Assembly: GCF_947568905.1 (NCBI RefSeq)
Contig: NC_079169.1
Location: 14,198,001-14,262,000, forward strand
DNA: 64,000 bases
Source: Ostrea edulis
Taxonomy: Eukaryota
Direction: 5' to 3'
The position numbers and the translations under genes were made by a program. The notes beneath the pieces were generated by a model that had not been told where the DNA came from, ran no database searches, and saw only the letters and a list, made by a program, of their open reading frames with translations. Positions 7,209-63,742 of this stretch are shown here, one piece after another; the stretch's first letter is position 1; the number at the start of each line of letters is the position of its first letter.

Positions 7209-10200
7209 TCAGTATTTGGGATAATCACCATACCCACTATGACCATCTGAAATTTAAAAATATCATCATAATATATTTCATCATCTATTCAATAATCAGA
7301 ACAACCATTGTTACATAAAGAAAAAATGGAAAATGTAATTTGTATAAATTAACCACGACATCGCATTACCTTACATTGTATTTGGAAAAGGTCAGAGGAG
7401 TCATTTATTAATCTGGTATTTATAACTACAATAGTCTATAAGTATCACTTTTATTAGCATCTAAATATACATTCTAAAATACTTACAGTTCACGCAGCAA
7501 CCCCAATAGTGGTATCTGTAGTCACAGTGGTATCCATGGTAACAATGCTTATAATGATGGCATTGACCTCCCTCATGGCAAAAAGAAAAACCTAAAACCA
7601 TAACCATAATTAACTGAGACATTATATCCTGTATAGGTAATACATGCACATACATCACTTTCATTTCAAAGATAAAATAAAGAGCACATATAGTCTGGTT
7701 TGAATTTTGGGGTAAGTTATACACTGACACGTGCATGGGTATCAAATCCATAGAATTTCATATCCTCAGTAAATATAGCAGGTGAACTTCATGCACTAAA
7801 TCCTTTTGACTGACTTGTAAAACAGAGATTTAAGACGGATAAAAGAAAAAAAGGGATGCCTTCAAAACCCTCAATCATAGCACTCCAGTAAACATTTGAT
7901 ATTGATACATGTGTGAATTGATTAGCATAGTTACCCAACAGAGGCACAAGGACAACGTTTCTTCCCAAAAGCCACTTGGAGATCAACAATTGATGAATAC
8001 ACGAGTGGTTACTAGGTATAAGATGAATACTTCTTTGTGTATACATTTTCCTTTCTTGTCTAGATTAAATTATAAAACATTGCAGATAAACTGATTTTTT
8101 TCTCTTCGCAAAAAACCCAACCATTTCCAGGAAAACTCATACTCCAATTCAAGAGCGATGGATAAACTAAGGAAATCAAAAATCATTAATTTTCAACCCC
8201 ATTTTGAAACTTTATAAGGACAAATTTCATATTAGATCTCTGTATAATAAAGATGTCTTTAACTGTCCGGTGAGAAGTGAGTTGTGTCACCATTCGCGAA
8301 AATTGGTAGAATGATTGATTGATTGTTTATGGTTTTAAGCCTTTTTGGGCAATATTTCAGCCATTTACAGACAGTCGTCTTGAATTAGACGCTGACTACG
8401 GAACCTCGTGAAACGATAGTGGGTTACACCATGCGACAGACGACAAGCATAATAAATACGGAAGGAAGGGTCAAAACACATCTTTTCTATATCACAAAAG
8501 TTCTAAACACTGAATGTAGTTTTTTAATGTAAAGTTTATCCTTCAGATATCGAGAAGTCGATTGAAAATAGCTTCTATGGATTGGTTTTACGCCGTTTTG
8601 GCATTATTTCAGCCATTTTACGGCGGTCTGTGAAAAAGTGAAGATATTGAAGTGTTCCATGAATGCAAGGTGAAAATAACGAACAGTGATCAATCTCGTA
8701 ACTCCTACAAGCAATACAAAATAGATAGTTGGGCAAATACGGACCCCTGGACACACCAGAGGTGGGATCAAGTGTCTAGGAGGAGTAAGCATCCCCTGTT
8801 GACCGGTCACACCCGCCGTGAGCCCTATATCCTACCCCGAGATCGCACGAGCGACAAATATCATAATCCCGCCCCCAAAGAATACAAACTTAAAGAGTGT
8901 AATAAACATGGACCCCTTGACATACTAGAAGTGGGATTAGATGCCTAAGAAGAACACATTTTCCCGTTTGAATTGGTGCAGGTAATATATTTTTGAGCCT
9001 GCCAATCAGCATCTTTTCATAAAACCACCACAAGTTTGTGAGGAGTTTAATCATGTAATGCTAGGTGTTAAAAAGGTATTTAACAAATTCATTGGATAAT
9101 GTTTTAGGGGAAAATCATGTTTGATATTTTAAGGGTAAACTCACAAAATGTGCATCGGTGCACAATACATTTTCTTATCCAAAACAAAAACAAAAACAAA
9201 AAACAGCCCCCTCCTAATAAAATAGAAAACTAGAAAACCTTGGAAGATCTTTTTAGAACATTAAGATTAAATCAATCAACTGATCATATAATTGCTGGGT
9301 TTTTTCTGGAATTACATGTTTCTAGACGTTAAAGTGCTTCGAGTTCGATTGATTGATTGTATCTTGTTTAACGTGAGTGAAAAATTCTGGAGCAGGGCGT
9401 TAAACAGGATACAGCAAACCTTAACTTGGAATCTGTAAGATGAGTTGAATAGACAAACCTAGTACTCACTTTGTAATGTTTCCTCAAAACAGACAAGTTC
9501 ATCAAACAATGATTTTCTGAGAAAAAGAAAATTAAAACTTCTTTACATCTTCAATACCCAGAAAAACATTGACAAATAAGGTCCTCACTTGAAAACTGTA
9601 GGGTGAATTACATGGACAAATGATATACTCTCTATGTAATATTACATCCAAACTAAGTTCAACAATCTGTGATGTTCTCAGAAATTGACGAAAATCAAAA
9701 TCCTTGCCACCTGTTCATCTTTAATACCCATATAAACACTGTGTAAAATGATCAAGGTTCTCACTTGAAAACTAGGGGGAAATAAGATGAACAAATCATG
9801 TACCCTTATTTCGAATAAAGGGGAAAACTCCTGCAGAATCAATGAAAATTTGAGCATGATCTATGGTAAACCACCAGAAAACTACACTGTAAACTTCAGC
9901 TTGATACACTGTATGCGACAGAGAAACGAAAATGAAAAAACAGAAACCCGGACGGACAGATGGACGGACATATTTATACAGACACCCCTGTACGATAATA
10001 TAGTACACAATACAATACACGATACCGCCAGTCTAAAGAATAAGAATTATAATAAGCACTAAAATGACAGACATTTACAATTAGAAACCAAATGTTCGGG
10101 AAATTGAATTCAAAGAAAATTGCTCCATTTTATATGCCTTAGTAATAATCAAAGCAGGCACATGAATGTGCAATTTCAGTGATTGGATAATTATTGGTTC

Positions 10201-12640: not shown

Positions 12641-13221
12641 ATCTTCATACACCAAATGTTTTATAACGATAAAAAATGAATCCACATACGACGGATATCT
12701 TAAAGCTCATCTGAAATTTTCTAATGAAATTTTGTTTATGGCATATCTGTAAAAACGTCCACATATTCGATTTCTTAAGAAGAACCACTGTGCTGATTTC
12801 AATGAATTTTTTCAACTAAAACTCTTTCAAAAGAAAGAGGGTTGAGAAAACGTTGAAATGCGATGGGGTACTTAGATCCCTCTGAAGATCTACTGAAACA
12901 GAAACAGAATAGCCATAATTTTGCAGAGGCCTATGTGTACACTGAAAGGAAGATTGAAGTTTGTTCAAACCATGGCCCCTGGTACTTAAGTACAAGTGAT
13001 ATAAAATCTACTAGAGTATGCACGGAAATTATTGACCCCTCCCCCTGGGCTATATTTTTCCATTTACCTTAATCGTAGAGGGAAATTTATATGGCTATTG
13101 GTTACATGTAATTCATTTAGAACAATTTGCTTTCTATGCCAATGGTCGAAAATAAAAAGGGAAGCACCTTAAAATATTTTCCTTACATCGAATCCCAGCC
13201 GCTACAGACCTTAGCCATTAA

Positions 13222-13753
13222 AGGGGCATGGGCACAGTGGAACTGTAAATAATTTTCTTTTTCCATTTTTATTGTTTACAGTGCTTAACTAACGTATTTT
13301 TAATTGTCAACCAAAATTTGAATATCAGTTTCTGAGTTACAAGTGAGATACAACACTCACGATACGCAGTTATGTAAACAAGGCGCATGCCATGTTTTTG
13401 TATACACATATATTGCTTAATAGAAAATAGCATTTCTAAAACAAAATTAGATGTGCTAAATACTACAAACTATTAAATTATGTTTACAATTAATTTGTAA
13501 ATTGAAAAATCTTCTTCAAACGAACTTTTACGAACTTTTACTGATATATCTAGCTTACATGTAACAAACACAGGGCACGAGCCTTGTTTACATAACAAAA
13601 AGAATTGTGAGTTCTGTATCTTCAATGTATCTCGACAACTGACATTCAAATTTTTGCTGACCATTAGAAATACTTTAGTTACATGTAAGCATTTCTAACA
13701 TTAAAAATGAAATTTAGTTTTTTTAAAAACTTTTCAGCCCAAATTGTATCCCT
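13222..13753. mobile_element. Non-autonomous TTAA-targeting element (Kolobok-like, AGGG...CCCT ends) inserted in a SINE
   Basis: TTAA duplicated at 13218-13221 and 13754-13757. Removing the insert rejoins the SINE sequence cagaccttagccaTTAAaactggtagagacagttc. TIRs are degenerate, so the family call is tentative. Confidence 0.6.
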
Positions 13754-13925
13754 TTAAAACTGGTAGAGACAGTTCTATCGCCAAACTGGTGGGAATATTG
13801 TTAGGAAATTAAATTAACTTTTAATTGTTTCTCTTATTTTCAGTTTATCCGTAACTGTCCAAAGGTTTTCGGAATTACCTAATAATAGACAGGCTATTTA
13901 TGTGTCAGTTCATTTCCTTAAATAA

Positions 13926-14285
13926 GATATGTGTCAAGGCCTCTGCTGGTGGACTGTTAGTCCCCGAGGGTCTCTACAGCCCAGTAGCTAAGTACTTCGT
14001 TACTAACTTGAAAATACGGATGTATATTTAATTGCTGTTATAAAATTTAGAAATTCATTTCAAATTTAAGGATTATCTCCCTCATACATAGCTCTTATCC
14101 TTAGACGAATTTGACTCCATTTTTTTTTTTTTTTGGCACGCTGTTTTTGGCTATAATAGCTCTAAAACGTCATTGTTATTTCGGATTTCAAACATTTCCG
14201 TTGAGATCACTGAAGAGACATTATTTGTCGAAATGCACATCTGGTGCATCAAAATTGGTACCGTATAAGTTTTACATGATAACCT
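13926..14285 (+). mobile_element. PLE-associated repeat carrying a hammerhead ribozyme motif
   Basis: Contains the hammerhead core at 14201-14252; counterpart at about 38013-38345. PLE assignment rests on the known link between minimal type I hammerheads and PLEs. Confidence 0.55.
14201..14252 (+). ncRNA. Minimal type I hammerhead ribozyme, mutated copy
   Basis: CTGAAGA-GAC attattt GTC-GAAA core is intact, but stem III reads ATGCACAT (palindrome broken) and stem I has lost a base compared with 38265-38317. Confidence 0.55.
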
Positions 14286-14809
14286 ACATGATTACATAAC
14301 AAAACATTTGGACGGATAATTTTCAATTCATCTTGATTTTTCTCCTTCATATCGTTACCACAATACACAATGATTTAATGAGGCCGCGAAATTGAAATTC
14401 AATTCATCATCAGCAATACGTGCAAGGTTGAAAACGACATCCACCACGCCTGCGCAATACATTTCCCCAATGAAGACTATCTCTCAACACTTTCGTAAAA
14501 CTGTAGATTCTTAATAATCAATGGGTTAATCGATTAATTGTAACTTGCTTAATGTCCCTCTCGAGAATTTTTCTTTCATATGGAGACGTCACCAATACCG
14601 ATGAAGGGCTTCAAATTTACCGGTAGACCTATGCTCGGCGCTTACGACCATTGAGTATTGAGGGTTATTTAGCGAGCCACACCTATTGTGACACGGGTAA
14701 TCCGTTTTTTAGGTCATATCCGAGGACCCGTGACATTCACACCTGATGCCGAGCGTTTGGAGATGGAACTGTCATTACTTGTTTTATCGACTTAGGTCTG
14801 TCGCAGTCG

Positions 14810-17800
14810 CGCCATTGTATTAAGTGTGTTTTATCGAAGTGACTGTGAACGAGTTAATTAACTCTTATCGTGAGGAAGAATGAATTATCTATTATTGTGT
14901 GTGTACGTTGTTGTTTTGCTGTGAACTCTATAGATAAAGGTTTTGACTGTTTATTAAGGCATCTGTGTTGTAACATTGTAACAAATAAGAAGTCCTTACA
15001 ACAACACTGAAACGTGAATGTCCATTGTTCAAACAGGCAGGACGGACCAGAATCGACCACTTCCTCAGTACTTGTAAATATATACCTGATGGAGACAGAC
15101 GTTTCATGACCAAGTCTAGACGACTAGTTCAAATGGAGGACTCGGAAAGTGAAGAATTCGCAGGTGACTTTTGTGATCCTTCATCAGTAGATGATGAAGA
15201 CCCACCATCATTTATTCTATCAACTCGCCGCGTCAGCACTAGCAAGTCTGCTCAAATTAAAATGTTTTATAAGCACCACCCTGTGTATTTAACTATATAT
15301 TCTGGAGCTGAAATTAGCATGATTAGGACCAAATTTGCAGAGCTGATCGGAGCTCCTATCAAGAAGACATCGCAGAATGCTCTTCAAGCCGATGGCATGA
15401 CACCTCTTGAGAATGTCGGGGAAGTACATTTCACTCTAACCCGAAACAACAAAATACTTCACCTTGACGCCCTAGCCGTCAACGATTTGGATGTTGACAT
15501 TTTGGCAGGAATGCCATTCATGAAATGCAATGACATTGGCATACGTCCCTCCAAACACCAAGTGACCATTGGCGATTCTACTATTATCCAATACATACCT
15601 GATGGTCAGTCCACGATACCTCATCATGTGCGACGAGCCCAGGCCTTCCTCCTCCGAGTGGAACCAACAACAACAACCGTTTGGCCTGGATCATACATGG
15701 AGCTCAAAATTCCTGATGTTTTACACCCTGAATCAACTCTTTCCATGGAACCGCGAGTGAACCGGGCCACAACAGGAAACCTGATCGAAGCTATTGGTGG
15801 GAAAGTTCGACTCTTGAATGTCACTGATGAGCCATGTGAATACACAAAAATGATCACTTGTGTTAACCTCACCTTACATCTACAAATTACACTGATTTAG
15901 ATGGGAGTACAGACTATGAAACAGATCCTATCCTCTTCACTGTCAGAATGACAGGGACATCAAGTTTCCACTCAGACACAGTTAGTATTGATCCAGAAAA
16001 TATTCTGAGCGAAACCGATCGTAAGAAGTTCAACAAACTACTTGAAAGGTACGACTCAATATTTGACCCAGGTTTTGGAGGATACAATGGAACATCTGGC
16101 AAATTCGAATGTCATATAAACATGTGACCTGTTCAACCTCCACAGCGAAAAGGAAGGCTATCACAGTATTCGAGAGACAAATTACAGGAATTACAACAAA
16201 AATGTGATGAACTTGAGAACTTAGGAGTTCTTAGAAAACTGGAAGAATTGGACATCTCTATTGAATATCTGAATCCATCCTTTTTCGTCAAAAAGCAAAA
16301 CGGAGGCTGCAGACTCGTCACAGCTTTTGAAGACGTGGGACGCTACAGTAAGCCACAGCCATCACTCATGCCGGATGTTGATTCAACTCTTCGAACCATC
16401 GGCAGATGGAAATACATTATTGTGTCCGACTTGACCAGAGCATTCCATCAGATTCCTCTTTCGAAACCATCCTTAAAGTACTGTGGCATTGTGACGCCTT
16501 ATCGAGGAGTACGTGTGTACACTAGGTGTGCTATGGGCATGCCAGGCTCAGAAACTGCTCTTGAGGAGCTTATGTGCATATTATTCGGAGACTATCTCCA
16601 AGTAGGTAGTGTGACTAAACTAGCTGATGACCTATATTGTGGAGGGCAAACAGTGGAAGAATTACTCAATAATTGGGAAAGCGTGCTTGAGTCACTTGCA
16701 CTGTGTGGACTTCATTTGTCTCCTACCAAAACCATCATATGCCCCCGTTCCACCACAATATTTGGATGGAATTGGACGGAAGGGAAGATTTCGGCCAGCA
16801 AACACAAGGTCTCCACATTATCATCATGCAGTGTTCCCGATACAGTGAAAGGCCTTCGATTATTTCTTGGTGCATATAAGATTCTTGAGCGGGTAATTCC
16901 AAACTGTTCTGATATACTTAACCAATTACAAAACTCGATTGGAGGAATGCAATCCAAAGACAAAGTACAGTGGACTGATGAGCTGCGTCAACATTTCAAG
17001 AACGCTCAAGAAAAGCTGTCATTAAGCAAAGCAATTATCTTACCCATTCCGTCTGATGAACTTTGGATTGTTACAGATGGTTCCGTCAGCAAACGAGACC
17101 TAGGAGCTACTATGTATGCCATGCGCAAAGGAAAACTAAATCTTACTGAATTTTTTAGTGCCAAATTAAGAAAGCATCAAGTAACATGGCTGACGTGTGA
17201 AATTGAAGCATTATGTATCGCAGCAGCAATTAAACACTTTAGTTCATTCATAATTCAATCTGTAAAACAAACTCATGTACTTACTGACAGTAAACCATAT
17301 GTGGAAGCTTTTGAAAAACTTCGTCGTGGAGAGTTCTCATCAAGGCCAAGAGTCACATCCTTTTTGTCCGTGGCTAGTCGGTACCGAACTTCTATACAAC
17401 ACCTGGCTGGCTCAGCTTATGTACCCTCTGATTTCGCAAGTCGGAATGCCCCAGAATGTTCCGAACTGAGATGCCAGATATGCAGTTTTATTGCTCAAAC
17501 AGAAGACTCTGTTGTAAGGTCAGTGTGCTTACAAGATGTGCTTCATAGTAAAGTCAATTTACCCTTTACAACACGCTCTGTTTGGGTATCCATCCAGTCG
17601 GAGTGCCCTAACTTACGAAGAACCCATGTACATCTCAAACAAGGAACTCGTCCATCCCGGAAACTAACTAACATTAGAGATGTGAAGCGTTACCTTAGCG
17701 TTGCTAACACTGCTAGAGATGGTCTCTCAGTTGTAGGTCGTTCAAATCCATTTCAACCTACTACATAAGCAATCATAGTGCCCCAACCAGTAGTGGAAGG

Positions 17801-19339
17801 AATAATTACTGCACTACATGTCTCACTTGACCACCCTACGCGTAACTAGATGCAGCAAGTCATGAAACGACATTTTTATGCTCTCGACCTGATGAAGGCC
17901 ATCGAAAATCTGTGTGAAACGTGCCACGTATGTGCTTCCTTGAAAAAAATCCCAGACCAGTTCATTCCTCAGTCTTCTGAAGAACCAACTGAAACATCTG
18001 GCATAATGTTTGCTGCTGACGTACTTAAGCGAAACCGCCAACTCATCCTTCTGCTCAGAGAATGTGTGACATCATTTACCGCCGCCTGTCTCATAGTTGA
18101 TGAGAAACGAGATACCTTACGGGAAGCTATTCTCCGTCTGGCTCTTGAGTTACGACCTCTGGATGGACCCCAGCTGTAATTCGTGTTGATCCTGCTCCTG
18201 TGTTTATGGGGTTTCGTAATGATGACACCCTTATGAAGTATCGAATCACCTTAGAAATCGGTCGGGTAAAAAATAAGAACAAAAATCCAGTAGCAGAAAA
18301 TGCCGTAGGGGAGTTGGAAGAAGAAATACTTCGATAAGAGCCAGGTGGAGGTCCTTTGACTGATCTGATACTGACAATAGCAATGGCAAGACTCAATTCT
18401 CGAATCCGGTTCTCTGGATTCTCAGCTCGTGAATTGTGGACTCAGCGAAGTCACTACACCAATGAACAAATTCCAGTGTCAGATTTCTATCCGATGAATT
18501 CCAAGCAGACCCTTCGGGAAGCCAACCATTCTTCCAGTGCTTTATCTAAGTGGAAAAGCAACAAGACCCAGCATCAACAGTCACTCCAAGTAGGCGACTT
18601 AGTATATTTATATTGTGATCGTGACAAATCTAAAACAAGGGACCGCTACATATTAACAGCAATTGATGGAGAATGGGCCTACATCAAAAAGTTCTCTGGT
18701 GGACAGATTCACGCTAATTCTTACAAGGTCAAACTAGTGGAGTGCTATAGTGTTCCTTGTGAAATACCCCAGCCCAAGTTGCTACCAAAATACCCAGATG
18801 ACGACACTGAGGAACATGAGGACCACCGGGACTGTATCGAAGGAAGCCATGATACCGATGGGATGGAGTCACAAGAACCAATACGAGATTACAGTACAAT
18901 ACCTCCACTTCTATCCGTACCACCCAGCGACGAAAATGAACCAACCGAATGCACCGTGGTAACCCCCGTTCCTGAGGACCAGATTGAGGGAGTCGCACCA
19001 CAACATTCTGAATTCCAATCGCAGCGACCAATTCGTGACCGCCGTCCGCCTAAATATCTAAAAGATTGTGTACTTTAATGACTGAATACGTTTGTAGTGC
19101 CTATCGTATGTTTCTTATATTACCATTATGAACATTTATTATTTCAAAGAAGCAAAAGGAAGCTGCACCATTATATCATGTGTGTTTTATCGAAGTGACC
19201 GTGAACGAGTTAATTAACTGTCATCGTGAGGAGGAATGAATTGTATGTTATTGTGTGTGCACGTTGTTGTTTTGCTGTGAACTCTATAGATAAAGGTTTT
19301 GACTGTTTATTAAGGCATCTGTGTTGTAACATATTGGCG
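14810..19339 (+). mobile_element. Gypsy LTR retrotransposon, copy 1 (defective; most of gag and the PBS deleted)
   Basis: Direct repeats 14810-14975 and 19166-19331; purine tract aagaagcaaaaggaag before the 3' LTR; order protease-RT-RNase H-integrase. Confidence 0.92.
15025..19078 (+). pseudogene. Gypsy gag-tail/pol polyprotein pseudogene, copy 1
   Basis: Cys/His knuckle remnant (..KQAGR..HFLSTC); protease LTIYSGAEISMI (catalytic D read as Y); RT DLTRAFHQIP / MGMPGS / KLADDL; RNase H IVTDGS / CEIEAL / TDSKP; integrase CETCHVC, FAADVL, RVDPAP, NPVAE. Several stops and frameshifts. Confidence 0.92.
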
Positions 19340-22300
19340 CCGGAATTCGAACCCTGACCTTCCACAGGAAGGGTGAACGCTCTAACTCTAGACCACCGTG
19401 GCGGTTTTGTTGCCCAAAGGGCTTTATGGAAATTGATCAGGTGATCACCCCGTATTCATATCCCGATAAATATTTCAAAATGACACCTTAATCATTTAAT
19501 AACTTTTAAAGTGATGACTTAACAATGATACTGATTGGATGAAAAATTTGTTTGATTTCTTAGTTACTCTCGTCCGGAGTTCATCTGCACTAATCACGTA
19601 AGACTGCTTTTCTCTGGAATGCGTCTTCCCCGTTCTAATTTTTGCGCTATTTGTAGAACGGGAATTTCCACACAAGCATTGGAAACGAAATGTATTCGTT
19701 TGATGCTACCAAAACTAAACACAGCCAAAGATAGAATAAAATACAAATTAATTTAAAGACACAACACACTTAGGCTTAGCGATGACGTGGCATAATATAG
19801 TCAACTTGATGACGTAGGGCACTGATTGGTAGAAGTAGGGCCTAGAGAGATTATACAAGTTTCCGTATGTATCGTCTGCTTTACAAGTTAGATAACATGA
19901 TGGAACAAGCAGCGGTTTTTGATCTGGGAGATGTTAATAAATTGAACTGCGTTATATGGGTCTCAGTCAACGAGCACAATTTAGATAAAGAGGTGTTGAG
20001 CTTTTTACTGGATATTTCATCGTTCCTACGACTCAACCAGTCTCCTCGAATGCACCACTTGTTCTCTTCCTTTACATATAATGCAGATTTTAACGAATGC
20101 ACCTTTAATCTGGCGTATACTCCATTACAATCTGCACAATTACTCCACCTGCCCTAAACGCACAGCCTGTTTTGTTGAGTTTTCATTGAACATTACGGAT
20201 AGGTATTTCTATACGCCATTTCGAAAAAGTTAATTCAACCTTTTTGATGACAGAAACTATGTTTTTATATTTTAAAAAAATAATTAAATGATAAGAAATA
20301 AAACTTACAATTCTTTATTTGATGCATGTATCAAAGAAAAAATTGGACGGAAAACTTTCTCATCAATGCGGTACGCAAGTACAAACAAAAACGTAAAATT
20401 GGAGTCAGTGCAAGGTGAGTTATTCATAAATACACTGTTATCAAAATTATGACATAGTTCAAGATTAGCGTCAACGAATGGTGATGACATGGAATGCGCT
20501 AAAATAGATACATTTACTGTCATCATACTTCCCCAAAATCTATATACTTTTCAAATGATATAAACAATTTTGATATAAGCATTTTTATTGAATAGATTGA
20601 TTACTTATCAATTTTATAAAATAAATGTCACAGTAAACAAAACACATTTTAATACATCATGTAGAAAAATGCAATGAAATTTTAATGCATTTATCAACGA
20701 CACCTAAATAGATACAGTAGTTGAACAGATCAACACTTATTACACATTTTAACATAAGATCTCTATTCATATATTGAAAGTCATCATTTGATATACCATA
20801 AATTCTGGTAATCGATGCAGAAAAGAGAGTATTCGTCATCAATATTGCACTGAAATTGAATCGGAAATTAAATATTTATCATTTGACTCATTCCTAATAT
20901 AACAGGTTAACCTAATCTTTGTATCAATGTTTTGTCAGCAAAGCATTCGGCCTTCTGAAGACATTGAAAAATAAATGTGTATAATTCGTCTACCCATTAC
21001 AAAAGAAACACACAGCACTATGCGCAACATACACAACGAGTAATAAAATGGAACGAAGAATAAAATATCTATTAATGGGAGGGTTTTTTGTCATTCATCC
21101 GATTACTAGTTTATTGCTGATATATAAAGTAAGGAAAGCGTATAACAAAAGATTCCGATCGATGAAATCCGGAATTAGGAGGGGGAAATTCTATACCAGG
21201 GCGGTTGTTCCGCCATGGGGAAAACTCTATACTGACTTTGTACATAGGGGAAAATTATATGCTCGGATGATTTTCCCCCGGGGAAAAACCTATCCTGGGC
21301 TCGCTTTTTCGGGGCGGGGGTCTATCCAAGGAAAGTCTATGCTACAACACCGGGATTCCTGTATTTCGAGTTAGGCTATCTAACTGCAAAGCTACACAGG
21401 CGGACATATAAAGTATAGTAGTATTCTACTGTAATGTTTTGGTTCAATTCAATCAAACGTTTTAATGACTATATTTATCATGTTAACATGGAATGACAAG
21501 ACATCCCTTATAATTAGAACAGACTGTGTGTATATATACCCGGGGTGCTATGATTCCGTGTCTTTCTTCCAAGCTGATCGAACAGAGAAGGGAGCTTAAT
21601 AAGAAGTAAGGATAAATAAAGGTTTTAGCATTAGGAAAGGTAAAGAGACAATCAATTCAGTGGCCCGAAAAGAGCTGAAGCTGTTTTGGTTGTTTGCTCT
21701 CCTTATTGTTTTCCGGAGTGGTTGTCCATTGTGACCGACAATAGCACTAACAGTAAGTCAGGGAAAATAGTTAGTGCTGGGGATAGTGGCCCGAATAGAG
21801 CCGACCTGTTCCGGGTACTAGTCTATTTAGCTAAGGAAACATACTATTTACTTTCTTCAAGTCTTCCATTTATTATTGATTTACTTCTTGATTTCAACCC
21901 AAGGTAGGGACATTCAAATAAATAGATGTATATCCAATCAGTGATTGAGGATAATTATACTTTAGTTAAGCAAAGTGGCTCCTTTTGAAATCATAGAGTG
22001 CCGTTACACTATAAAACAAAATTTGAATTTTTTTTCCATAATCTTAAAATAACTCTTCATATCGAGGTCTCTTTTCTATTATGTGATTAGGTAATGGCTT
22101 AATCACAACAGGGTGCCTCTTTTCTTTTATGTGAATAGGTATGATAACAAAAGGTCATGTATTTTACAAAGTAATAAATATATATCAAGTTGTATGACTT
22201 ATTACTTCATTTTATCATAAAACAAATAATGATAATGAACATGAATAGAATATCTGAATTTTATCCTAGTCATTTGATCCCCTACAGCATGAAGTGTATT

Positions 22301-23940: not shown

Positions 23941-24435
23941 CACAGGCAATTGCATCGTTTGGGGTTGAATTTACTATATAAAGAGTAAAGGTATAGAACT
24001 CTAAATATTACGGATTAAAAATTGTCAGTCACTTGAAGCTATTACGGACTTCATTTTATGAATTGGGGTAAGGAATTCATTTTAGAAATGATATTTTATG
24101 TTGCACATTCTATTTGATATATTGTTGCAATGTTCAAACACTCTGTGTAGTCGTATAGTGTCAGGCCCCAGCTAACAGTCAACCAAAAAATAATAGGCAT
24201 TTTTCGGAGTTCATTTCTGCATATCTTGGGAAGTATACGGAATTTCGGGATGAACTTTGGTAGTAATGTAGCCTGATCATGTATAAAGAAATTAAAATAC
24301 AAAGTAGAATTTTATATCAATTAATTTATTGTTTTTACATCGGCTAACTTGGGTACCCTATATTTAGAGTTCTATACCTTTACTCTTTATATACACCTGT
24401 AGTAAATTCGACCCCAAGCGATGCAATTGCCTGTG
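23941..24435. mobile_element. MITE (about 495 bp) with ~70-bp TIRs inserted in the hAT OTU-like ORF
   Basis: cacaggcaattgcatcgtttggggttgaatttacta..tataaagagtaaaggtatagaactctaaatat (23941-24008) is the near-perfect inverse of 24360-24435. Excision restores the frame NENTFVTMSTNKSSLQ. Confidence 0.85.
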
Positions 24436-47586: not shown

Positions 47587-49272
47587 ATGTATGCCCAGAC
47601 GGACGAAAGAAAGGCATTTTTCGAAAAAGTGCACGTAGAAGCAAGGAATGCAGGGGAAAAGGGATGGGGAGTAATAAGTTTTCTTGTTAGACTCAAAGGG
47701 CAAATTTTTAAGAAATATCCTCTTCCAACAAGCATACCTAATATCCCAACTTCGAATATTCCAAAAGATGCTGTTTCCTCAGAGCTTTATCCAAATGATG
47801 CTCCTTCTGAGCTTATCCTGATTCAGATGTATGGTGATGGGAATTGTTTATTCAGAACTCTCTCTTTTTTGTGTTTGGATATGAAGACAATTTTAAGGAA
47901 ATGAGGGTACGAATTGTGTTTGAACTTGTTTCAAACCTGAAGCGCTCCACGAATGAAAACACCTTTGTGACCATGTCCACAGGCAATTGCATTGTTTGGG
48001 GTTGAATTTACCATATAAAGAGTAAAGGTATAGAACTCTAAATATTACGGATTAAAACATTTCAGTCACCTGAAGCTATTACGGACTTCATTTTATGAAT
48101 TGGGGTAAGGAATTCATTTTAGAAATGATATTTTATGTTGCACATTCTATTTGATAGCTTGTTGCAATGCTCAAACACTCTGTGTAGTCGTATAGTGTCA
48201 GGGCCCAGCTAAATGTCAACCAAAAAATAATAGGCATTTTTCGGAGTTCATTTCTGCATATCTTGGGAAGCATACGGAATTTCGGGATGAACTTTGGTAG
48301 TAATGTAGACTGATTATGTATGAATAAATTAATATACAAAGTAGAATTTTATATCAATTAATTTATTGTTTTTACATCGGCTGACTTGGGTACCCTATAT
48401 TTAGAGTTCTATACCTTTACTCTTTATATACACCTGTAGTAAATTCGACCCCAAGCGATGCAATTGCCTGTGACCATGCCTGTGACCATGTCCACAAACA
48501 AAAGTTCACTTCAATATGACTTTGAAAGTTCCCTGTCAGAAGAGTGTTTAATTACTGGTGATTTGATTGCTTCGTTATAAAAGGAAACAATAAAAACAAC
48601 CCAGAACGGTTACTATTCAAGCCTTTTACATATGTTCGAAGCTTCTAACGTTTTGCAGAAACCAATCATGTCGATTTTCCCCGAGGTGCAAAACCCTGGT
48701 GTAAACAGACAAGATCATAATCAGCTTATTGTTCCTCTTGACTGTCCTGATGCTAACGAATATCAGGATGCTATCCACATCATGTGGACTCAAACAATTG
48801 CTACAAAAATAGATGGTTGGACACCTAATAATTTTGTTGCCTGTATTCACAAGCATGAGGAACCTCTTTCAAAGCGTTCGAGATTATCCTTTGAGGATTC
48901 TGAACCTCATCGCTCATTTGAACCAAAACAATCACAAGATAGTCCTTCCCCACTCTTGGAGTCTAACACAAATGAGGAGTCTATTGAAACAGGTAAATTT
49001 GGGGAAACTACAAACAAAGAAAAAGACAAACATGTTAAGGTTGCTTCCTTTATTGATTCTTCTTCTTCAGAAGATGATATCTCAGAAATACCAGTTCAAA
49101 AGGCCCAGGTTGTACATGAAAAATGACATACACCAGAGATTGGTAGTACTCCAAATCAGCCACGGAATATTTTCTTTCCAGCAAATAAGTTTGGTAAAAA
49201 GATGAGATATTTCAATGCCTCCTGGTTTGATCGGTGGTCTTGGTTACATTATGTTAAAATCAGGGTTTAGGG

Positions 49273-49313
<41 letters not shown>

Positions 49314-51085
49314 GGTTAGATGTTGTATTCTGTTTTCCTTGCATAAAATCATTTCAGAAGAAGGCTCTCAGTTATCACAAGAAAGAAAAAGCTTTCATAT
49401 CAAGTGGTTTTAAAAACTGGAAAAAAGCAACCACAAAATTCGCCGCACAACGAGAAAAGTGATTGCCATAAAAAGGCAATGGAAAGGGAGTTTACGATAA
49501 AGGAGGAGGTTAAAGATGTTGGAGAATGTCTTTCAAAGAATGGCTACAACGCAAGACAAATAAGTATGTTGCTCCAGATATACAAAATGAAATTTTGCAG
49601 GTGATGGGGTTGCAGGTTTTGCGACAAATTGTTGCTTTCATCAAAATCTAGCAATTAAAGATGCCCTTTTGAGGTTCGATCTGCCTATCAACAAAGAACG
49701 AGGCCAGTGTTATGACATGGCTGTTTATATCGCTGGTTCAAAGACAAGTTTTGCAACACAAATTCATGCACTTGAACCCAGAGCCCTTTACATACACTGT
49801 TATGGTCATGCTCTTAACCTAGCTTGCAGTGATTCTATTAAGGGATGTAAATTGCTTAGAGACACCCTGTATATTGCAAAGGATATAACAAAGTTGATTA
49901 AAGAATTTCCAAGAAGGGAGATGATTTTCAATACATTAAAAAATGCCCATAATCTAGAGAAAACGTCAGCGGGAATAAGGGTTTTTGTCCCACAAGATGG
50001 ACAATAAAACCGACATATTTTTGAGGATATTGTCAAACTATGAAATTCTAAGAAATGTTTGGGATGAAAGCCTCCAATACGTGCTTGAGGTAGAAATAAG
50101 AAACAGAATCAGGGGAGTGGCTGCTTATATGTGCATGTTTGATTTTTTCTTTGGGTGTTTACTGAGTGAAAAACTTTTACGTTATAGTGATAATTTGGCA
50201 AGGGCTCTCAGGCTCCAAATCTCTTGGCGAGTGATGGTCAAAAAATGGCATCAACGACAATAAGTGCTTTGCAAAGTCTCCGAGATGAGACAGTCTTCAC
50301 TCAGTTTTACGAGGGAGTGTACAGATATGTATAGGAAAGATTTCTACGAGGCATTAGATCTGCTTTTTGCTGGCATAAAATCTAGATTTGACAAACCACG
50401 TTACAAAGCTTATGTTAATCTTGAAAATCTCGTAATTAAGGCTTGCACAGGTCAAACGTTTGAAGAAGAATTCAATTTTGTCACGACCCTATATGATACA
50501 GATTTGAAGCCAAAGGATCTTCACTGCCAGCTTATAATGTTAAAGACTGTTTTGCCAAAGGACTTTACGCCAGATATACCAAGTGTGGTTGAATTTTTGA
50601 GACATTCAAATGAAAAAAGTCTGTTTGCCGAGATCCTCAAAATTCTCAAACTAATTTTGGTACTTCCTGTAACTAACGCTAACATTGAGCGCTCATTCAG
50701 CGCCTTGAAAAGATTGAAAACATCACTGAGATCAACAATGAGCCAAATACGAACAAACAATTTGCTTTTATTGCATGTTGATTTTGACTGCGAATAACTC
50801 CGTTTACCTGATCAGTATATGGGGCTCACGGCGGGTGGGACCGGTCAACAGGGGATACTTACTCCTCCTAGGCACCTGTTCCCACCTCTGGTGTTTCCAG
50901 GGGTCCGTGTTTGCCCAAATATCTATTTTGTATTGCTTGTAGGAGTTATGAGATTGATCACTGTTCGTTATCTTCCACTTGCATGTTCATAAAAATGAGA
51001 CTGATGAACTAAATCCAGAAAAAATAGTTGAGGAGTTCGTAAGTGAAAGTGAACACAGACTGGCGATTTTTGGAAAGTTTACCGA
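47587..51085 (+). pseudogene. OTU/vertnin-like plus hAT transposase pseudogene, copy 2
   Basis: Same motifs as 23529-27175 with additional lesions. Confidence 0.85.
49263..49317 (+). repeat. Interstitial telomeric repeat insertion (55 bp of TTAGGG/TTTAGGG)
   Basis: ggg[tttaggg(ttaggg)3]2 tt; absent from the paralogous site at about 25230. Confidence 0.95.
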
Positions 51086-51426
51086 ATACTAAATACCTTA
51101 TGACTCAGAAATGATTGATAACAAATTGATAAAAATATAAACAAAAAAAAAAGATTCAAAAATATCCTTAACACCCCCTCCAAAAAAAACCCCAAACAAA
51201 CAAAGCTTAAAATTAAAGTTGAGGGTTTTCTGGGAAAGTAATTAGATTCTATGTACATAATCAGATTGATGTTCATGACGTACACCTCAATGCTTGCACA
51301 TATTTATGCAGTTATCTTTTTACTAATGGTTTTGTCGATATCACTTTTTTGTCGTAAATTACTTTGGTGTGTTGCCTCCCCCCTCCCCCCCCCCCCCCCC
51401 CAGTGAAATTGCTTCCTACGGGCAGC

Positions 51427-52025
51427 ATCAGACAGTCGGTCACTTCTGCTTCATACTTGGATATTTTATTGAAAGTAGATATTAACGGCAAACTAACAGC
51501 TCAGTTTTCTGACAAACGGGATGATTTCATCATCTTCATCGTCAACTTCCCTTATTTATGTAGCAATATTCCATTATCACCTTCACATGGTGTTTATATA
51601 TCTCAACTGATTCGATACGCAAGAGCTTGTTCTGCGTATGGTCAATTCTCAAATCGAAGCAGGCTAATGACAAACAAGTTGATGGTTCAGGGGTTCCAAA
51701 GGTCTCGATTAAAGTCAGTATTTCGCAAATTCTATGGTCGTTATAACGATCTAGTTTGTCAATACAACCTATCATTGGGTACATTGCTTGACGTGTTTCA
51801 TACCGATTGTTAGGCCGTTCTTGGGACACTGATTTTGACTACGGATAACTCTATTTACCTGATCAGGATATAGGGCTCACGACGGATGTGACCGGTCGAC
51901 AGGGGATGCTTACTCCTCCTAGGCACTTGATCCCACCTCTAGTGTGTCCAGTGGTCCGTGTTTACCCAACTATCTACGTATTGGTTGTAGGAGTTATGAT
52001 ATTTATCACTGTTCGTTATCTTCAT
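51427..52025 (+). mobile_element. PLE RT-thumb/3' fragment (distal half, split by hAT copy 2)
   Basis: SASYLDILLKVDING..DKRDD..GVYISQLIRYARACS..DVFHTDC* plus the 3' end. Confidence 0.8.
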
Positions 52026-53038
52026 TTTTATTAAATGGATTATAAGTCATTGTAAAGTTGTATTATGAATATAAATTATATAATTATCCTTTAAGGTATA
52101 TTCTGTATGCTTCTCAATAGTGCATATAATATTCTTGTGATAGCCTAAGCCAGTCTCTCATTTAATTTTGATTTTAGAATATCTTCACTTATATTTGCCA
52201 TACTACATTGTACTTCTTCAAGTCTTTCCGATTTGTCTGGAAATTGATGTCTTACTTAAAAGTACGGGTCATTGTGTATCATTTAACTGTACAAAGACAG
52301 AAAAATTATGATGATGAAGTCGTAGACATTGCGTGTATTTGAAAGCATCGATATAAATGATCTTCATAATTTTAATGCTTTCAAATAAACAATATGGAAA
52401 TTGAACATAAGGCATGCGTTGATGAAAATAACAATGATACTCCCCTAAAGTAGAAAACCCATTGGGGCCAGAAAATCAAAAGAACATGCAAGTAAATATT
52501 CATTCATTTCAAAATAAGAAAAGGGGATTTTGTATGCTAAGCATATAATAAGATTTTTAAAAAGTTTCTCATAGCAGGGAAGTTGCCATAAAAACAAATT
52601 AGAATTATCAAACATCAACAGCTTTCTGTGAATTAAAAGCTATATGTGAAAATGGACTCTGTTTTTGTTTAAAATAGCTTTTATCTACAATTACTAGAGG
52701 GGAATGCCTCTTTAACAACATTCATTATTAAATTTAAAACATACCAATGTTAAATATCAACTTGTTTTAATGGAGAGAGATGAAGGTCACGGGACAAGCT
52801 CCAAGGTAGACGTACTTTAGAGAAGTTTGAGATTTTGACCAAAATTAATGCATAAGACTTTCAGTGCATTCGTGTATATAGTGTATATTGTGTATATATG
52901 TGTTGGATATGTTTCCCAAACTTTTTCGGTGAGTTTTGTGCCATTTTGTGTGCTTTAATTCACTTCTGGGAGTGTATTTATCAATCGCTATTGTTACGGG
53001 TGAACGTTTACTCACTCCCGTGTACAAGTACAAGGCCA

Positions 53039-54363: not shown

Positions 54364-54405
54364 GGTGATGGACAGTGATTAAGGTATTAGAACACTAGCC
54401 CTTAA

Positions 54406-61040: not shown

Positions 61041-63742
61041 TCAATATCCGTACCCACCATGACCTGAAATTTAAAAATATCATCAGAATATATTTCATCA
61101 TCTATTCAATAATCAGAACCACCATTGTTAAAGAGAGAAGAAAGGGGAAAAGTAATTTGTATAAATTAACCACGACATCGTAAAAGCTTATATTTGGAAA
61201 AGGTCCGTGTAGTTTTGTAGTATTCTGATGTTTATAATTACAATAGCTTATAGGTATCACTTTTATTAGAATCTAATTATACATTATAAAATACTTACGC
61301 CTCACGCAGCAACCATAACTGCGGTTAAATCTGTAGTCACAGACGAATGGATAGTGACAAGGATTCCAAACACTGCATTCTCGACTTTTATAGCAGTAGC
61401 GCTGGGAATAACCTGAAACAATGACCAATTGCCGTATTTTAAGTCACAGTATCCATATTTACAATAACGATTCCAAACAGTGCATGTTTATTTGTCATAG
61501 CAGTGGCGCTGGGGATAGTAGAAACCTGAAACAATGACCGCAATTAACTAACACCTGTAGATGTAATGCATGCACATGTATTACTTTTATTTCAAAGATA
61601 TAAAAAAGCACACATTATGGTGTGAATTTGGGGGACAAAAACCTAATTTATTGATAGTATTGTTAAAACGGGTTATAAAAAGTTATTTGCATGAGGATCA
61701 ACCACATACAAGTTCATATTCTCGGTAAATACATGTATATCAATGAAAAATGAAGATAACGAACAGTGATCAATCTCACAAATCCCACAAGCAATACAAA
61801 ATATATAGTTGGGCCTACATAGGCTATGCCTGTTGCCCAATCCTGTTGAGTTCCTCAATAAAAAAAAATGGATACACGTGTACCAGAAAGGTACAGTACA
61901 TAGTGTGCCCTTCACTGTCTAATGTAGAGTGTTTTCTTAAGCCACGAGTTATAGAACTTTGATTAAGGTAGTATCAGCTATCATGAAGCAGTATACTTTC
62001 TTTTGCATTTTGAATATAAATAAAAAGGTCGTTGTTTAAAAACCTGACAGGAGGTCGATCGACAAACCAAGAGCTTTATTTGTAAAATATTCCCCCAAAG
62101 TTCATTATTACAAGTTCAACAACCTACATTGTTATTCAAACATCAAAGACAATCAGAAAATTGCTAGGAATCAAACTATTTGCTAAATGCTCATCTTCAA
62201 GCTGGTGCTCAGAGGGCATAAGCGCCGAACATAGGTCGAAATTTTACAGCCCTTCATCGGCAATAGTGTTGTCTCCACATGACAGAAAAATTCTCGAGCG
62301 GGACGTTAATTAAGATACAAACAACCTTAGCTTGTAATCTGTAAGATGAGTGAAATAAACAAACAAGTACTCACTTTGTAGTGTGTTCTCAAAACAGTTA
62401 AGTTCAGCAAAACAGAAATTTTCTCAGAAAAAGAATAAAATCAATATTCTTGTAATATGCACATTTTCGATACCCATAAAAACACTGATAAATAAGGTCC
62501 TCACTTGAAAACTATGGGATGAATTAGATGGACAAATGGTATATTCTCTATGTAATATTACGTCAAACCTGACGAAGTTCAGCAATCTGTGATTTTCTCA
62601 GAAATGGACGAAAATCAAAATCCTTGCCACCTGTTCATCTTTGATACCCATACAAACACTGTGTAAAATGATCAAGGTTATCACTTGAAAACTATTTTGG
62701 AATAAGATGAACAAATCATGTACCCTTATTTCGAATAAAAGGGTCATAACTCCTGCAGAATCAATCAAAATTCAAACATGATTTACAGTGACCCACCAGA
62801 AAACTACGCTGTAAACTTCAGCTTAATACATTGTAGGTGAGAGAGAAACGAAAATTTAAAAACCCCGGACGGACATATGTATGCAGACACCCCTGTACGA
62901 TAATATAGTACATAATACAGTATACAATGTAGTACACAGTACCTTACGACTAGAGAAGGGCGTCCAAGAATTATATTACATAATATGATACATGATAGCT
63001 TTAAAAAAGATTAATAAAGGTAGCAAAATATATGTAGAAAAGGCTAGAACTGAACGCACGCTAACAATAGAAACACATTTCATCTTAGTAGTGATCGCAC
63101 GATAATGATACAAACTTATCACATGTTGATTTGGACTTACAATTTGATATGTTAACTCGGGAAGGAATTAGAAAACATCGTATTCGTCCAAAAAACTGAT
63201 CCACAATGGACATTGTGATAATTATTAACAAAATAAATCAAGGAGGACGAGCTGATTATTGATGGTGGCCAATTCAAAAATCAAATGATTATAACCTGTG
63301 AGATTCGTCAAGTTGCACTGAGAAGAAATTTGAATAAAGACTTAGAGACCGAAATGCAAAGAGAAGTAAAGAATGTGGACCAACTCGTGTAACAGAGTAT
63401 TTTTTGTCAAATACAAAACATCCCCACCCACCATTCCCAAAGAAACAAAATCAGATTTGAATGGATTAGGTAGAGCCGTATCAAGGTTTTTTTTACAAAT
63501 ATTTACCATAACATAAAGAGGAATAGATAAGATTATGTAAAACGTAATTTGTTTTGCAAAATAAAGAATTGAATTGTAAACGCACGAATTGAAATTTGAC
63601 AGTGTTTGAATAATAATAATAAACCAATGCCGGTACCATAGATTAATAAATTTGAAGCGATAGGATGAATTATAATAATCTTACCGGCTGACAGGGCAGC
63701 CAGACAGACGAGGAGAGTCAGAACAATCAACAGTTTTCCCAT
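61041..63742 (-). CDS. Gene C: 64-aa secreted six-cysteine peptide, divergent paralogue (3 exons)
   Basis: Exons 63742-63685 (58 nt), 61412-61299 (114 nt), 61063-61041 (23 nt); phase-1 GT-AG introns. Protein MGKLLIVLTLLVCLAALSAG-YSQRYCYKSRECSVWNPCHYPFVCDYRFNRSYGCCVRRHGGYGY*. Confidence 0.8.
61413..61525 (-). pseudogene. Degenerate partial tandem duplicate of gene C exon 2
   Basis: Own acceptor ggtcattgtttcag; reads (G)FYYPQRHCYDK*TCTVWNRYCKYGYCDLKYG; lacks the CC pair and donor; abuts the acceptor of the intact exon. Confidence 0.75.
62215..62330 (+). mobile_element. 3' part of the tRNA-derived SINE in intron 1 of gene C
   Basis: gcataagcgccgaacatagg..gcccttcatcgg..gtctccacat..aaaaattctcgagcgggacgtt matches the reverse complement of 14540-14650. 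Confidence 0.65.

What the first reader, a model, noticed from the sequence alone, without database searches (positions are those of the whole stretch)
7209..63742. Hidden tandem family of three secreted six-cysteine His/Tyr/Gly-rich micro-peptide genes
Seen: three minus-strand genes (A 7209-11433, B 30925-35179, C 61041-63742). Each has a TATA box, a 58-nt signal-peptide exon, a Cys-domain exon and a short tail exon, joined by phase-1 GT-AG introns, and each stays in frame. All exons are below or buried in the ORF-track calls. The scaffold C-x5-C-x5-C-x5-C-x8/9-CC is invariant while the loops are replaced (CHEGGQCHHYKHCYHGYHC in A vs CYKSRECSVWNPCHYPFVC in C); signal peptides are nearly identical. 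Predicted mature A (46 aa) has 8 His, 10 Tyr and 6 Cys. Known: conserved signal plus fixed cysteines plus variable loops is typical of defence peptides and toxins. The C-C-C-C-CC order is beta-defensin-like, C-x5-C-xxGYx-C-x8-CC resembles the lustrin A/WR1 cysteine module, and Gly/Tyr tails with basic ends occur in shell-matrix proteins (shematrins, KRMPs). The spacing does not match the bivalve antimicrobial families I know (CS-alpha-beta defensins, big defensins, mytilins, myticins, macins, CRP-I knottins). Inference: an undescribed or uncharacterised family, acting as an antimicrobial/metal-binding (His) peptide or a Tyr/DOPA cross-linking matrix peptide.
Basis: partly seen in the sequence, partly recalled or inferred. 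Interest (0 to 1): 0.88.

Follow-up and report, generated by a model that had tools for sequence, protein, structure and literature searches.

The report
Oyster knottin-like secreted peptide gene family
The three small genes are real and spliced as predicted (shown directly for gene B); they belong to a family of about 15 genes in what appears to be the flat oyster, encoding tiny secreted disulfide-knotted peptides with fast-changing loops, found in no described family and of untested function (host defence is the best guess).

Summary
Three minus-strand, three-exon genes sit at the stated coordinates. Each has a TATA box, a 58-nt signal exon, two phase-1 GT-AG introns and an open frame (64-67 aa).

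RNA contigs from two public runs match the predicted gene B mRNA letter for letter across both junctions and end in poly(A). A third run shows the exon 2/3 join.

The genome, apparently Ostrea edulis, holds 15 intact Cys-domain exons in two tandem clusters: 5 on this contig and 10 on another.

The second cluster has the cystine-knot framework C-x6-C-x5-CC-x4-C-x8-CC. Genes A, B and C are a subgroup without the second Cys of the CC doublet.

AlphaFold models of both types (pLDDT 73-76) retrieve almost only knottins, though never significantly. Pfam gives only sub-threshold knottin-toxin hits. There is no beta-defensin or lustrin match, and the genes do not fit Mytilus CRP-I.

Exon 2 diverges about three times faster than the flanking introns.

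Searches of 5.8 and 1.8 billion proteins found only one relative, an "uncharacterized" O. edulis protein whose 3' end looks mis-modelled.

Function is untested. I rank host defence first and a Tyr/His matrix peptide second.

Earlier scan notes do not mention this family.

The parts
11478..11485 (-). Gene A TATA box (TATATAAA), inside a promoter block that is 95-97% conserved among the nearest copies (A, B, C, L020)
11376..11433 (-). Gene A exon 1 coding part: 58 nt, signal peptide, ends in phase 1 before GTAAG
   Evidence: The exon 1 / exon 2 junction position is used by RNA contigs
7487..7591 (-). Gene A exon 2 (105 nt): Cys domain, C-x5-C-x5-C-x5-C-x8-CC
   Evidence: AlphaFold model
7209..7246 (-). 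Gene A exon 3 coding part: Gly/Tyr tail plus TGA stop
7123..7208 (-). Gene A 3' UTR. ATTAAA lies at about 7148-7143 and the poly(A) addition site at about 7123. The site was placed using gene-B-derived contigs aligned on A
   Evidence: (T-runs at 7123 in X1 and X3)
35224..35231 (-). Gene B TATA box
35122..35179 (-). Gene B exon 1 coding part (58 nt, signal peptide)
31207..31311 (-). Gene B exon 2 (Cys domain). It differs from A by 4 substitutions, all nonsynonymous
   Evidence: The RNA contigs in X1 and X2 carry B's letters
30925..30965 (-). Gene B exon 3 coding part (tail ending in Gly, then TAG)
   Evidence: The junction letters GT|ATGCTG appear in X1, X2 and X3
63787..63794 (-). Gene C TATA box
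63685..63742 (-). Gene C exon 1 coding part (58 nt, signal peptide)
61299..61412 (-). Gene C exon 2 (114 nt): Cys domain, C-x5-C-x5-C-x5-C-x9-CC, with loops unlike those of A and B
61041..61063 (-). Gene C exon 3 coding part (short Gly/Tyr tail plus TGA)
61421..61527 (-). Degenerate partial tandem duplicate of exon 2 in gene C. It has its own identical acceptor (cattgtttcag) and an in-frame TAA after 11 codons, so it could act as a competing or poison acceptor
   Evidence: direct reading
6615..52900 (.). Two copies of a tandem segmental duplication of about 24 kb (6615-28856 and about 30.3-52.9 kb). It carries genes A and B, whose non-coding parts are 94-97% identical

Best explanation
These are real, transcribed three-exon genes. 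They belong to a family of about 15 genes, arranged in two tandem clusters, in what appears to be the flat oyster genome. Exon 1 supplies a nearly invariant signal peptide. Exon 2 encodes one small disulfide-rich domain of 34-38 aa. Exon 3 adds a short Gly/Tyr tail.

The domain is knottin-like (inhibitor cystine knot type). The contig C9 paralogues carry C-x6-C-x5-CC-x4-C-x8-CC, and one carries the classic six-Cys array. Genes A, B and C and their two neighbours on this contig form a subgroup. This subgroup lacks the second Cys of the CC doublet and keeps the C-terminal CC, which again gives six Cys. That implies a rewired disulfide: Cys I would pair with one of the terminal Cys. The rewiring is inferred, not shown.

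The scaffold (the cysteines, the Asp-Tyr after Cys V, and a Gly before the final CC) is fixed, while the loops change much faster than the introns.

The most likely role, by inference only, is an extracellular host-defence effector. A protease-stable knot would present variable aromatic, His and basic loops to microbial surfaces or chitin, as knottin-type antimicrobial peptides do. In A and B, the His residues may add pH- or Zn/Cu-dependent binding.

Shown: gene structure, splicing and polyadenylation of gene B, family size, absence from known families, and exon-specific hypervariability. Inferred: signal cleavage site, fold, disulfide pairing and function.
For: - Gene models are in frame with canonical phase-1 introns.
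- Spliced, polyadenylated RNA contigs identical to the predicted gene B mRNA occur in X1 and X2; X3 has an exon 2/3 piece with the same poly(A) end. A loose end in X1 matches exon 1 joined to exon 2 of the next paralogue, L020.
- The promoter plus exon 1 has 18 copies in the genome. There are 15 intact Cys exons plus 1 broken one, all inside the two clusters.
- The alignment shows invariant Cys, Asp-Tyr and Gly positions, and the CC doublet in the C9 type.
- AlphaFold gives pLDDT 75.6 and 72.7, with the same three-strand layout for both types.
- Foldseek returns knottins in 9 of 11 rows and 12 of 12 rows. VIA-align returns cystine-knot peptides in 5 of 5 rows both times. Hits include tachystatin B, PAFP-S, Ep-AMP1 and mu-agatoxin.
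- Sub-threshold Pfam hits fall mainly on knottin toxin families: Toxin_7, Toxin_12 and Conotoxin.
- ESM Atlas look-alikes are mostly spider, cone-snail or cyclotide knottins, with scores below 0.9.
- A versus C identity is 66% in exon 2 against 88% in intron 2 and the 3' UTR (Fisher p = 1.3e-6). All 4 A-B differences in exon 2 are nonsynonymous.
Against: - No structural match is statistically significant (Foldseek E>2, Z 2.1-2.6), and model confidence is only moderate.
- A, B and C lack Cys IV of the canonical knot, so a true knot is unproven for them.
- The peptides are not strongly cationic: pI is 7.2, 8.3 and 9.0 for A, B and C. By my residue count from the and 23 sequences, several C9 members are neutral or acidic. 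This is atypical for membrane-active antimicrobial peptides.
- In A versus C, dS in exon 2 (0.62) is as high as dN (0.57). The excess divergence could therefore reflect exon exchange, or homogenisation of the flanks by gene conversion, rather than positive selection.
- The tissue and any inducibility are unknown, because the runs are coded.
- Expression specifically of A or C was not shown. C has a competing acceptor followed by a stop codon.
Confidence: 0.5

Rival explanations
1. The peptides are structural matrix or adhesive components of shell, periostracum, ligament or cement. The compact Cys domain would anchor to chitin or other matrix. Tyr (possibly converted to DOPA), His-metal coordination and the Gly/Tyr tail would cross-link the material.
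For: A and B have 10 Tyr, 8 His and 7-8 Gly in 46-47 residues, plus Gly/Tyr tails. The RNA contigs have very high k-mer depth (619 in X1; tens of thousands in X5), as expected for bulk secretory products, although the tool warns that depth cannot rank genes. Several paralogues are neutral or acidic by my residue count, which is unlike typical antimicrobial peptides. Knottin-type peptides such as tachystatin B, a top structural hit, bind chitin according to established knowledge.
Against: Loop hypervariability with a fixed scaffold is typical of interaction-driven effectors and not of bulk structural proteins. The His/Tyr richness is not shared by C or L020. The tails are only 7-13 residues, far shorter than the Gly/Tyr domains of shematrin or KRMP (from my own knowledge). 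No tissue data are available.
Confidence: 0.25
2. The peptides are knottin ligands with a non-immune molecular target. Candidates are ion-channel or receptor modulators (toxin-like or deterrent), intercellular signals or pheromones, or protease/amylase inhibitors.
For: The nearest sequence and feature look-alikes are spider and cone-snail channel toxins. The best weak PDB sequence match is the knottin alpha-amylase inhibitor wrightide R1, at E = 1. The C-C-C-C-CC order also occurs in conotoxin framework XXV, peptide as25a (PMC4278219).
Against: All similarities are below threshold. Oysters are sessile filter feeders with no venom apparatus. The precursor has no propeptide, whereas conotoxins, CRP-I and most neuropeptide precursors do. 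No target is known.
Confidence: 0.15
3. The models are chance ORFs or dead gene relics, and the conserved blocks are merely parts of a repeated genomic unit.
For: A and B lie in a recent 24-kb duplication, so their similarity alone proves nothing. L019 has a broken exon 1 and a lost stop codon. One C9 copy is broken. C carries a pseudo-exon.
Against: There is a processed, polyadenylated mRNA of gene B with exact GT-AG junctions. Fifteen paralogues keep the frame, the phase and every scaffold Cys despite 30-50% loop divergence.
Confidence: 0.03

Closest known systems
Knottin / inhibitor cystine knot peptides, especially knottin-type antimicrobial peptides (tachystatin B, PAFP-S, Ep-AMP1)
   Same: Size is similar (about 35 aa). 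The C9 paralogues have the C-C-CC-C-C framework with x6/x5/x0/x4 spacing and a Gly-Tyr-x-Cys motif after the doublet. Both types are predicted to form a three-stranded sheet. These peptides are the top structural matches.
   Different: No significant sequence or profile match. A, B and C lack Cys IV and have an extra terminal Cys. The C9 type has 7 Cys. Disulfide connectivity is unknown. Charge is near neutral in many members.
Mytilus CRP-I knottin-like peptide family (PMC4558851, PMC10138031)
   Same: Both are bivalve multigene families in tandem clusters. Both have a conserved signal peptide, a hypervariable mature Cys-rich peptide, a signal exon ending in a phase-1 intron and a knottin-like array. 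Both are taxonomically restricted and of unresolved function.
   Different: CRP-I genes have 4 exons and a propeptide with a dibasic cleavage site. Their Cys array lies in the last exon, and the last loop is x3-5. Here there are 3 coding exons and no propeptide, the Cys array is in the middle exon, the last loop is x8-9, and the peptide ends in CC. CRP-I was reported absent from oysters.
Conotoxins (O-superfamily framework VI/VII; framework XXV, peptide as25a)
   Same: Mollusc origin, a conserved signal with a hypervariable mature toxin, and matching Cys orders: C-C-CC-C-C in the C9 type and C-C-C-C-CC in A, B and C.
   Different: Only sub-threshold Pfam Conotoxin hits, best E = 4.8. There is no pro-region and no venom context. 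Homology was not tested against as25a itself.
Ostrea edulis LOC125659557 (P0001), 'uncharacterized protein'
   Same: It is a true family member, at locus L031 on contig C9. It has the same signal peptide and Cys domain (65% identity to A over 79% of the query, E 4e-12).
   Different: The deposited 111-aa model adds an extra exon and reads the last exon in another frame. By homology with the RNA-supported gene B model, the product should end a few residues after the CC, with a short Gly-rich tail. It is of the 7-Cys type.

Membership tests
Knottin / ICK structural class | Six Cys in the order C-C-CC-C-C | tested here: not met
   A, B and C have C-C-C-C-CC; the second Cys of the doublet is Tyr or His. 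The feature is met by paralogue L024 (classic 6 Cys) and by the C9 type, which has one extra Cys.
Knottin / ICK structural class | Small triple-stranded antiparallel sheet similar to solved knottins | tested here: inconclusive
   AlphaFold pLDDT is 75.6 and 72.7, with 3 strands. Nearly all PDB hits are knottins, but with E>2, TM 0.35-0.65 and Z 2.1-2.6.
Knottin / ICK structural class | I-IV, II-V, III-VI disulfide connectivity with a threaded knot | not testable with these tools
This needs disulfide mapping or NMR.
Mytilus CRP-I | Four-exon gene; pre-pro precursor with a dibasic site; Cys array C(X3-6)C(X1-7)CC(X3-4)C(X3-5)C in the last exon | tested here: not met
   Here there are 3 coding exons and no propeptide, the array is in exon 2, and the last loop is x8-9.
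Beta-defensin | Match to defensin profiles, with the spacing and fold of the family | tested here: not met
   No beta-defensin Pfam hit at E<=10. There is only a sub-threshold plant AtDEF-like hit (16.6 bits against a cut-off of 25) on the A precursor. No defensin appears among the structural hits.
Lustrin A cysteine module / WR1 (Pfam Lustrin_cystein) | Profile match to the Cys-rich repeat | tested here: not met
   No hit at E<=10 for any of the 11 family members or for the A precursor.
Spider ICK toxin families (Pfam Toxin_7, Toxin_12) and Conotoxin | Score at or above the Pfam gathering threshold | tested here: not met
   The best hit is Toxin_7 at 19 bits against a cut-off of 27 (L024). 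Toxin_12 has E = 0.4 and Conotoxin E = 4.8.
Shematrin / KRMP shell matrix proteins | Long Gly/Tyr-rich repetitive domain with a basic region | not tested
   No reference sequences or profiles were at hand. The tails here are only 7-13 residues.

The most novel reading that the evidence does not exclude
This is a multigene family, so far seen only in this oyster genome, of hyper-diversifying cystine-knot peptides. One subgroup (A, B, C) has rewired its disulfide framework: it lost Cys IV and recruited an extra C-terminal Cys. It has also filled its loops with His and Tyr. The result would be a new type of metal- or pH-switchable mucosal or haemolymph defence peptide that current oyster gene annotation largely misses.
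Probability: 0.25. Interest if true: 0.65.

Novelty: new variant of a known kind. Interest (0 to 1): 0.5.

Why it matters
Flat oyster stocks have collapsed under parasitic disease (Bonamia, Marteilia), and only a few oyster antimicrobial peptide families have been described. Here, an abundantly transcribed, fast-evolving secreted peptide family has 14 of its 15 intact Cys-domain loci absent from the protein databases searched. That gives immunology, biomineralisation and proteomics studies new candidates, and it shows that spectra-search databases lack these sequences.

The natural series of 7-Cys, classic 6-Cys and Cys-IV-less 6-Cys paralogues is also a ready-made test of how a cystine-knot scaffold tolerates disulfide rewiring.

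Families with a conserved signal and a hypervariable Cys-rich mature peptide are already a known theme in molluscs. The finding is therefore useful rather than paradigm-changing.

Tried and rejected
- Word-index protein searches with the A precursor and with P0001 residues 10-66 found only P0001.
- A full HMM search of 1.84 billion representative proteins with the 11-member exon-2 profile found only P0001. Cross-species distribution therefore could not be established. Short spliced genes are poorly predicted, so this does not prove absence.
- A PDB sequence search gave only E>=1 matches: wrightide R1 and pleiotrophin.
- Pfam gave nothing above threshold. Rfam gave nothing in the window.
I did not resend it anywhere.
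- Literature searches found no paper on this family. I tried O. edulis with knottin, oyster with ICK or tachystatin, and LOC125659557.
- Earlier scan notes do not mention this family.
- No Cys-rich downstream exon was found for the three divergent signal-exon copies L021-L023.
Run identities are coded, so the tissue and species of the RNA runs are unknown.
- I rejected the beta-defensin, lustrin and CRP-I memberships (see the membership tests).
- I rejected positive selection as a proven cause of exon-2 divergence, because dS is as elevated as dN.


Full report
**1. Observation**

The window is AT-rich (GC 0.28-0.43) and contains a tandem duplication of about 24 kb: 6615-28856 is repeated at about 30.3-52.9 kb.

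I read the minus strand at the stated coordinates. All three genes have the same layout:
- TATATAAA lies about 45 nt upstream of an ATG.
- A 58-nt coding exon encodes a classic signal peptide: a Lys-containing N-terminus, a 14-residue hydrophobic core, then Ser-Ala-Gly. It ends in phase 1 at GTAAG.
- A second exon of 105-114 nt is entered at a ...ttt(t/c)ag acceptor and left at GTAAGT, again in phase 1.
- A short terminal exon holds a Gly/Tyr tail and the stop codon.

A script that splices the stated coordinates gives open frames of 66, 67 and 64 aa. The only correction to my first coordinates is that gene B's exon 3 starts at 30965.

With signal cleavage after Gly20 (the -3/-1 rule, read by eye because no predictor was available), mature A is 46 aa with 8 His, 10 Tyr and 6 Cys. 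The calculated pI values are 7.2 (A), 8.3 (B) and 9.0 (C).

**2. Expression and splicing**

In RNA runs X1 and X2, one contig (280 and 241 nt; k-mer depth 619 and 48) behaves as follows:
- It covers exon 2 (7489-7589).
- It jumps 7591|11376 with GT..AG ends into exon 1.
- It continues from exon 2 into exon 3 through eight letters that are exactly gene B's junction (...AAGT|ATGCTG...).
- It carries gene B's diagnostic substitutions at 7529 and 7541.
- In X1 it ends in a run of 22 T on the plus strand at 7123. That is a poly(A) tail 25 nt after an ATTAAA signal.

X3 has a shorter piece covering the 3' UTR and exon 3. Its loose end at 7237 carries the end of gene B's exon 2, and it shows the same poly(A) position.

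This is therefore a processed mRNA of gene B with both predicted junctions. No intronless genomic copy exists that could mimic it.

A 171-nt loose end at the exon-1 donor in X1 reads, in reverse complement, exactly the start of exon 2 of the next paralogue downstream, L020. That gene is therefore spliced in the same way.

Run X5 shows very high summed depth on all three exons and several further variants. The tool warns that depth cannot rank genes, and X5's identity is coded.

Not shown: a transcript that is unambiguously from A, or any transcript of C.

**3. The family is larger than reported**

The window is G000:C6:14198001-14262000 of an 895-Mb genome in 52 contigs.
- The promoter plus exon-1 block occurs 18 times, on contig C6 (14.17-14.42 Mb) and contig C9 (8.38-8.57 Mb).
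- A six-frame HMM search with the exon-2 alignment finds 15 intact Cys exons, 5 on C6 and 10 on C9. It also finds one broken copy, and nothing elsewhere.
- Every exon 2 has the same ag|GT ... N|gtaagt phase-1 boundaries.
- The C6 array is L019 (exon 1 disrupted and stop codon lost, so probably a pseudogene), then A, B, C and L020.
- C9 includes five identical copies spaced about 14 kb apart (L026-L030).
- Three more copies, L021-L023, have a promoter and signal exon about 70% identical to A's. I found no Cys exon downstream of them.

The only database relative is P0001, LOC125659557 "uncharacterized protein" of Ostrea edulis. Its source contig has exactly the length of C9, and it corresponds to locus L031. 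This indicates the species, and an earlier scan note agrees.

The deposited 111-aa model adds an exon and reads the last exon in a different frame. By homology with the RNA-supported gene B model, the product should end a few residues after the CC, with a short Gly-rich tail.

**4. What the domain is**

The alignment has invariant Cys I, II, III, V and VII, an invariant Asp-Tyr after Cys V, and an invariant Gly before the terminal Cys pair.
- The C9 genes read C-x6-C-x5-CC-x4-C-x8-CC.
- L024 reads C-x7-C-x5-CC-x4-C-x9-C, the textbook inhibitor cystine knot array.
- A, B, C, L019 and L020 have Tyr or His in place of the second Cys of the doublet, and they keep the terminal CC.

It is not a beta-defensin-like or lustrin-like module.

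Further evidence on the fold:
- **Pfam.** Nothing passes threshold. The sub-threshold hits are Toxin_7 (19 bits against a cut-off of 27), Toxin_12, Conotoxin, one Granulin hit, and one plant defensin-like hit on the A precursor. Neither Lustrin_cystein nor beta-defensin appears.
- **AlphaFold.** Using the 11-paralogue alignment, the A domain has pLDDT 75.6 and the L031 domain 72.7. Both have the same strand layout.
- **Foldseek.** It returned 11 and 12 PDB rows, of which 9 and 12 are knottins. They include tachystatin B, PAFP-S, asteropsins, Momordica knottins, agatoxins and wrightide.
- **VIA-align.** The exhaustive search of 48,161 chains returned five rows at Z>=2 for each model, all cystine-knot peptides.
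- **Significance.** None of these matches is significant on its own (E>2, Z 2.1-2.6). The evidence lies in their consistency.
- **ESM Atlas.** The feature look-alikes point mostly the same way, at scores below 0.9.

If the canonical pairs hold in the C9 type, Cys I in A, B and C must find a new partner among the two terminal Cys. The 7-Cys members would be left with one unpaired Cys. Both points are inference.

**5. Mode of evolution**

| Comparison | Promoter + exon 1 | Intron 2 | 3' UTR | Exon 2 |
|---|---|---|---|---|
| A vs C identity | about 95% | 88% | 88% | 66% |

- Exon 2 against intron 2 plus 3' UTR for A versus C gives Fisher p = 1.3e-6.
- A versus L019 shows the same trend (p = 0.007).
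- A and B differ at 4 sites in exon 2, all nonsynonymous. Their exon 3 is 80% identical, against 96-97% in the introns. That A-B contrast alone is not significant (p = 0.08).
- Nei-Gojobori estimates for A versus C give dN 0.57 and dS 0.62.

The excess divergence is therefore exon-specific but not demonstrably driven by selection. Diversifying selection, flank homogenisation by gene conversion, and exon exchange all remain possible.

Gene C carries direct evidence of local rearrangement. A partial tandem duplicate of exon 2, with an identical acceptor and an in-frame TAA, lies at about 61527-61421.

**6. Comparison with known families**

- **Mytilus CRP-I.** This is the closest bivalve analogue: tandem clusters, a conserved signal, a hypervariable knottin-like mature peptide and unresolved function. 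It differs in having four exons, a propeptide with a dibasic site, the array in the last exon and a short last loop. It was also reported absent from oysters.
- **Conotoxins.** Framework XXV (peptide as25a) shares the C-C-C-C-CC order, but nothing indicates homology.
- **Literature and earlier notes.** Neither contains a description of this family.

**7. Function**

Nothing here tests function. The competing readings are these:
- **Host defence (ranked first, about 0.4-0.5).** It fits the architecture of a conserved signal, a fixed scaffold and hypervariable loops. It also fits the tandem amplification and the structural resemblance to knottin-type antimicrobial and chitin-binding peptides.
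- **Against host defence.** The net charge is modest, and several C9 members are neutral or acidic.
- **Tyr/His/Gly matrix or adhesive peptide (about 0.25).** It fits the composition of A and B and the apparent transcript abundance. It does not fit the loop variability, or C and L020.
- **Other knottin roles (about 0.15).** These are receptor or channel ligands and enzyme inhibitors.
- **Chance or pseudogene.** This is excluded for gene B by the mRNA evidence.

**8. Verdict**

The finding is a previously undescribed oyster variant of the knottin-type secreted peptide theme. It is of moderate interest.

Noticed in passing
window 61421-61527 (-): Gene C has a partial tandem duplicate of exon 2 directly upstream of the real exon. 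The duplicate has the same acceptor sequence and an in-frame TAA after 11 codons. If the upstream acceptor is used, the product is truncated. Its remaining sequence resembles the C9-type motif (..C-D-x-K-Y-G-x-W).
   Followed up: partly
window 8570-8883, in intron 1 of gene A: A repeat is covered by many RNA contigs in all four runs (more than 90 contigs in X5; summed depth above 2e5), with many rearranged joints. It is probably an abundant transcribed transposable element or SINE. Rfam has no match for it.
   Followed up: partly
L031:1524-4090 (G000:C9, about 8.513-8.517 Mb); protein P0001: The deposited model of LOC125659557 (111 aa) appears mis-spliced. It includes an extra exon within a repeat-rich intron and reads the terminal exon out of frame relative to the family's three-exon structure.
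   Followed up: partly
L026-L030 (G000:C9, 8.445-8.507 Mb): Five copies, spaced about 14 kb apart, have identical promoter, exon 1 (55 nt, one codon shorter) and exon 2. This is either a very recent amplification or an assembly effect.
   Followed up: no
L021-L023 (G000:C6, 14.35-14.42 Mb): Three loci have a TATA promoter and signal-peptide exon about 70% identical to the family's (the peptide starts MGNLLVVW...). No recognisable Cys-domain exon lies within about 7 kb downstream. They may be a sister family with a different mature peptide.
   Followed up: partly
L019 (G000:C6, about 14.164-14.166 Mb): This family member lies 32 kb before the window start. Exon 1 is interrupted after 45 nt. The stop codon has changed, so the frame runs on for 8 more codons and adds a seventh Cys. 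It is a likely pseudogene.
   Followed up: partly
window 11458-11460, 35204-35206, 63767-63769 (-): An in-frame upstream ATG lies 27 nt before the signal-peptide ATG and only about 25 nt after the start of the TATA box. The RefSeq model of the paralogue starts there. Whether this ATG is inside the transcript is unknown.
   Followed up: no
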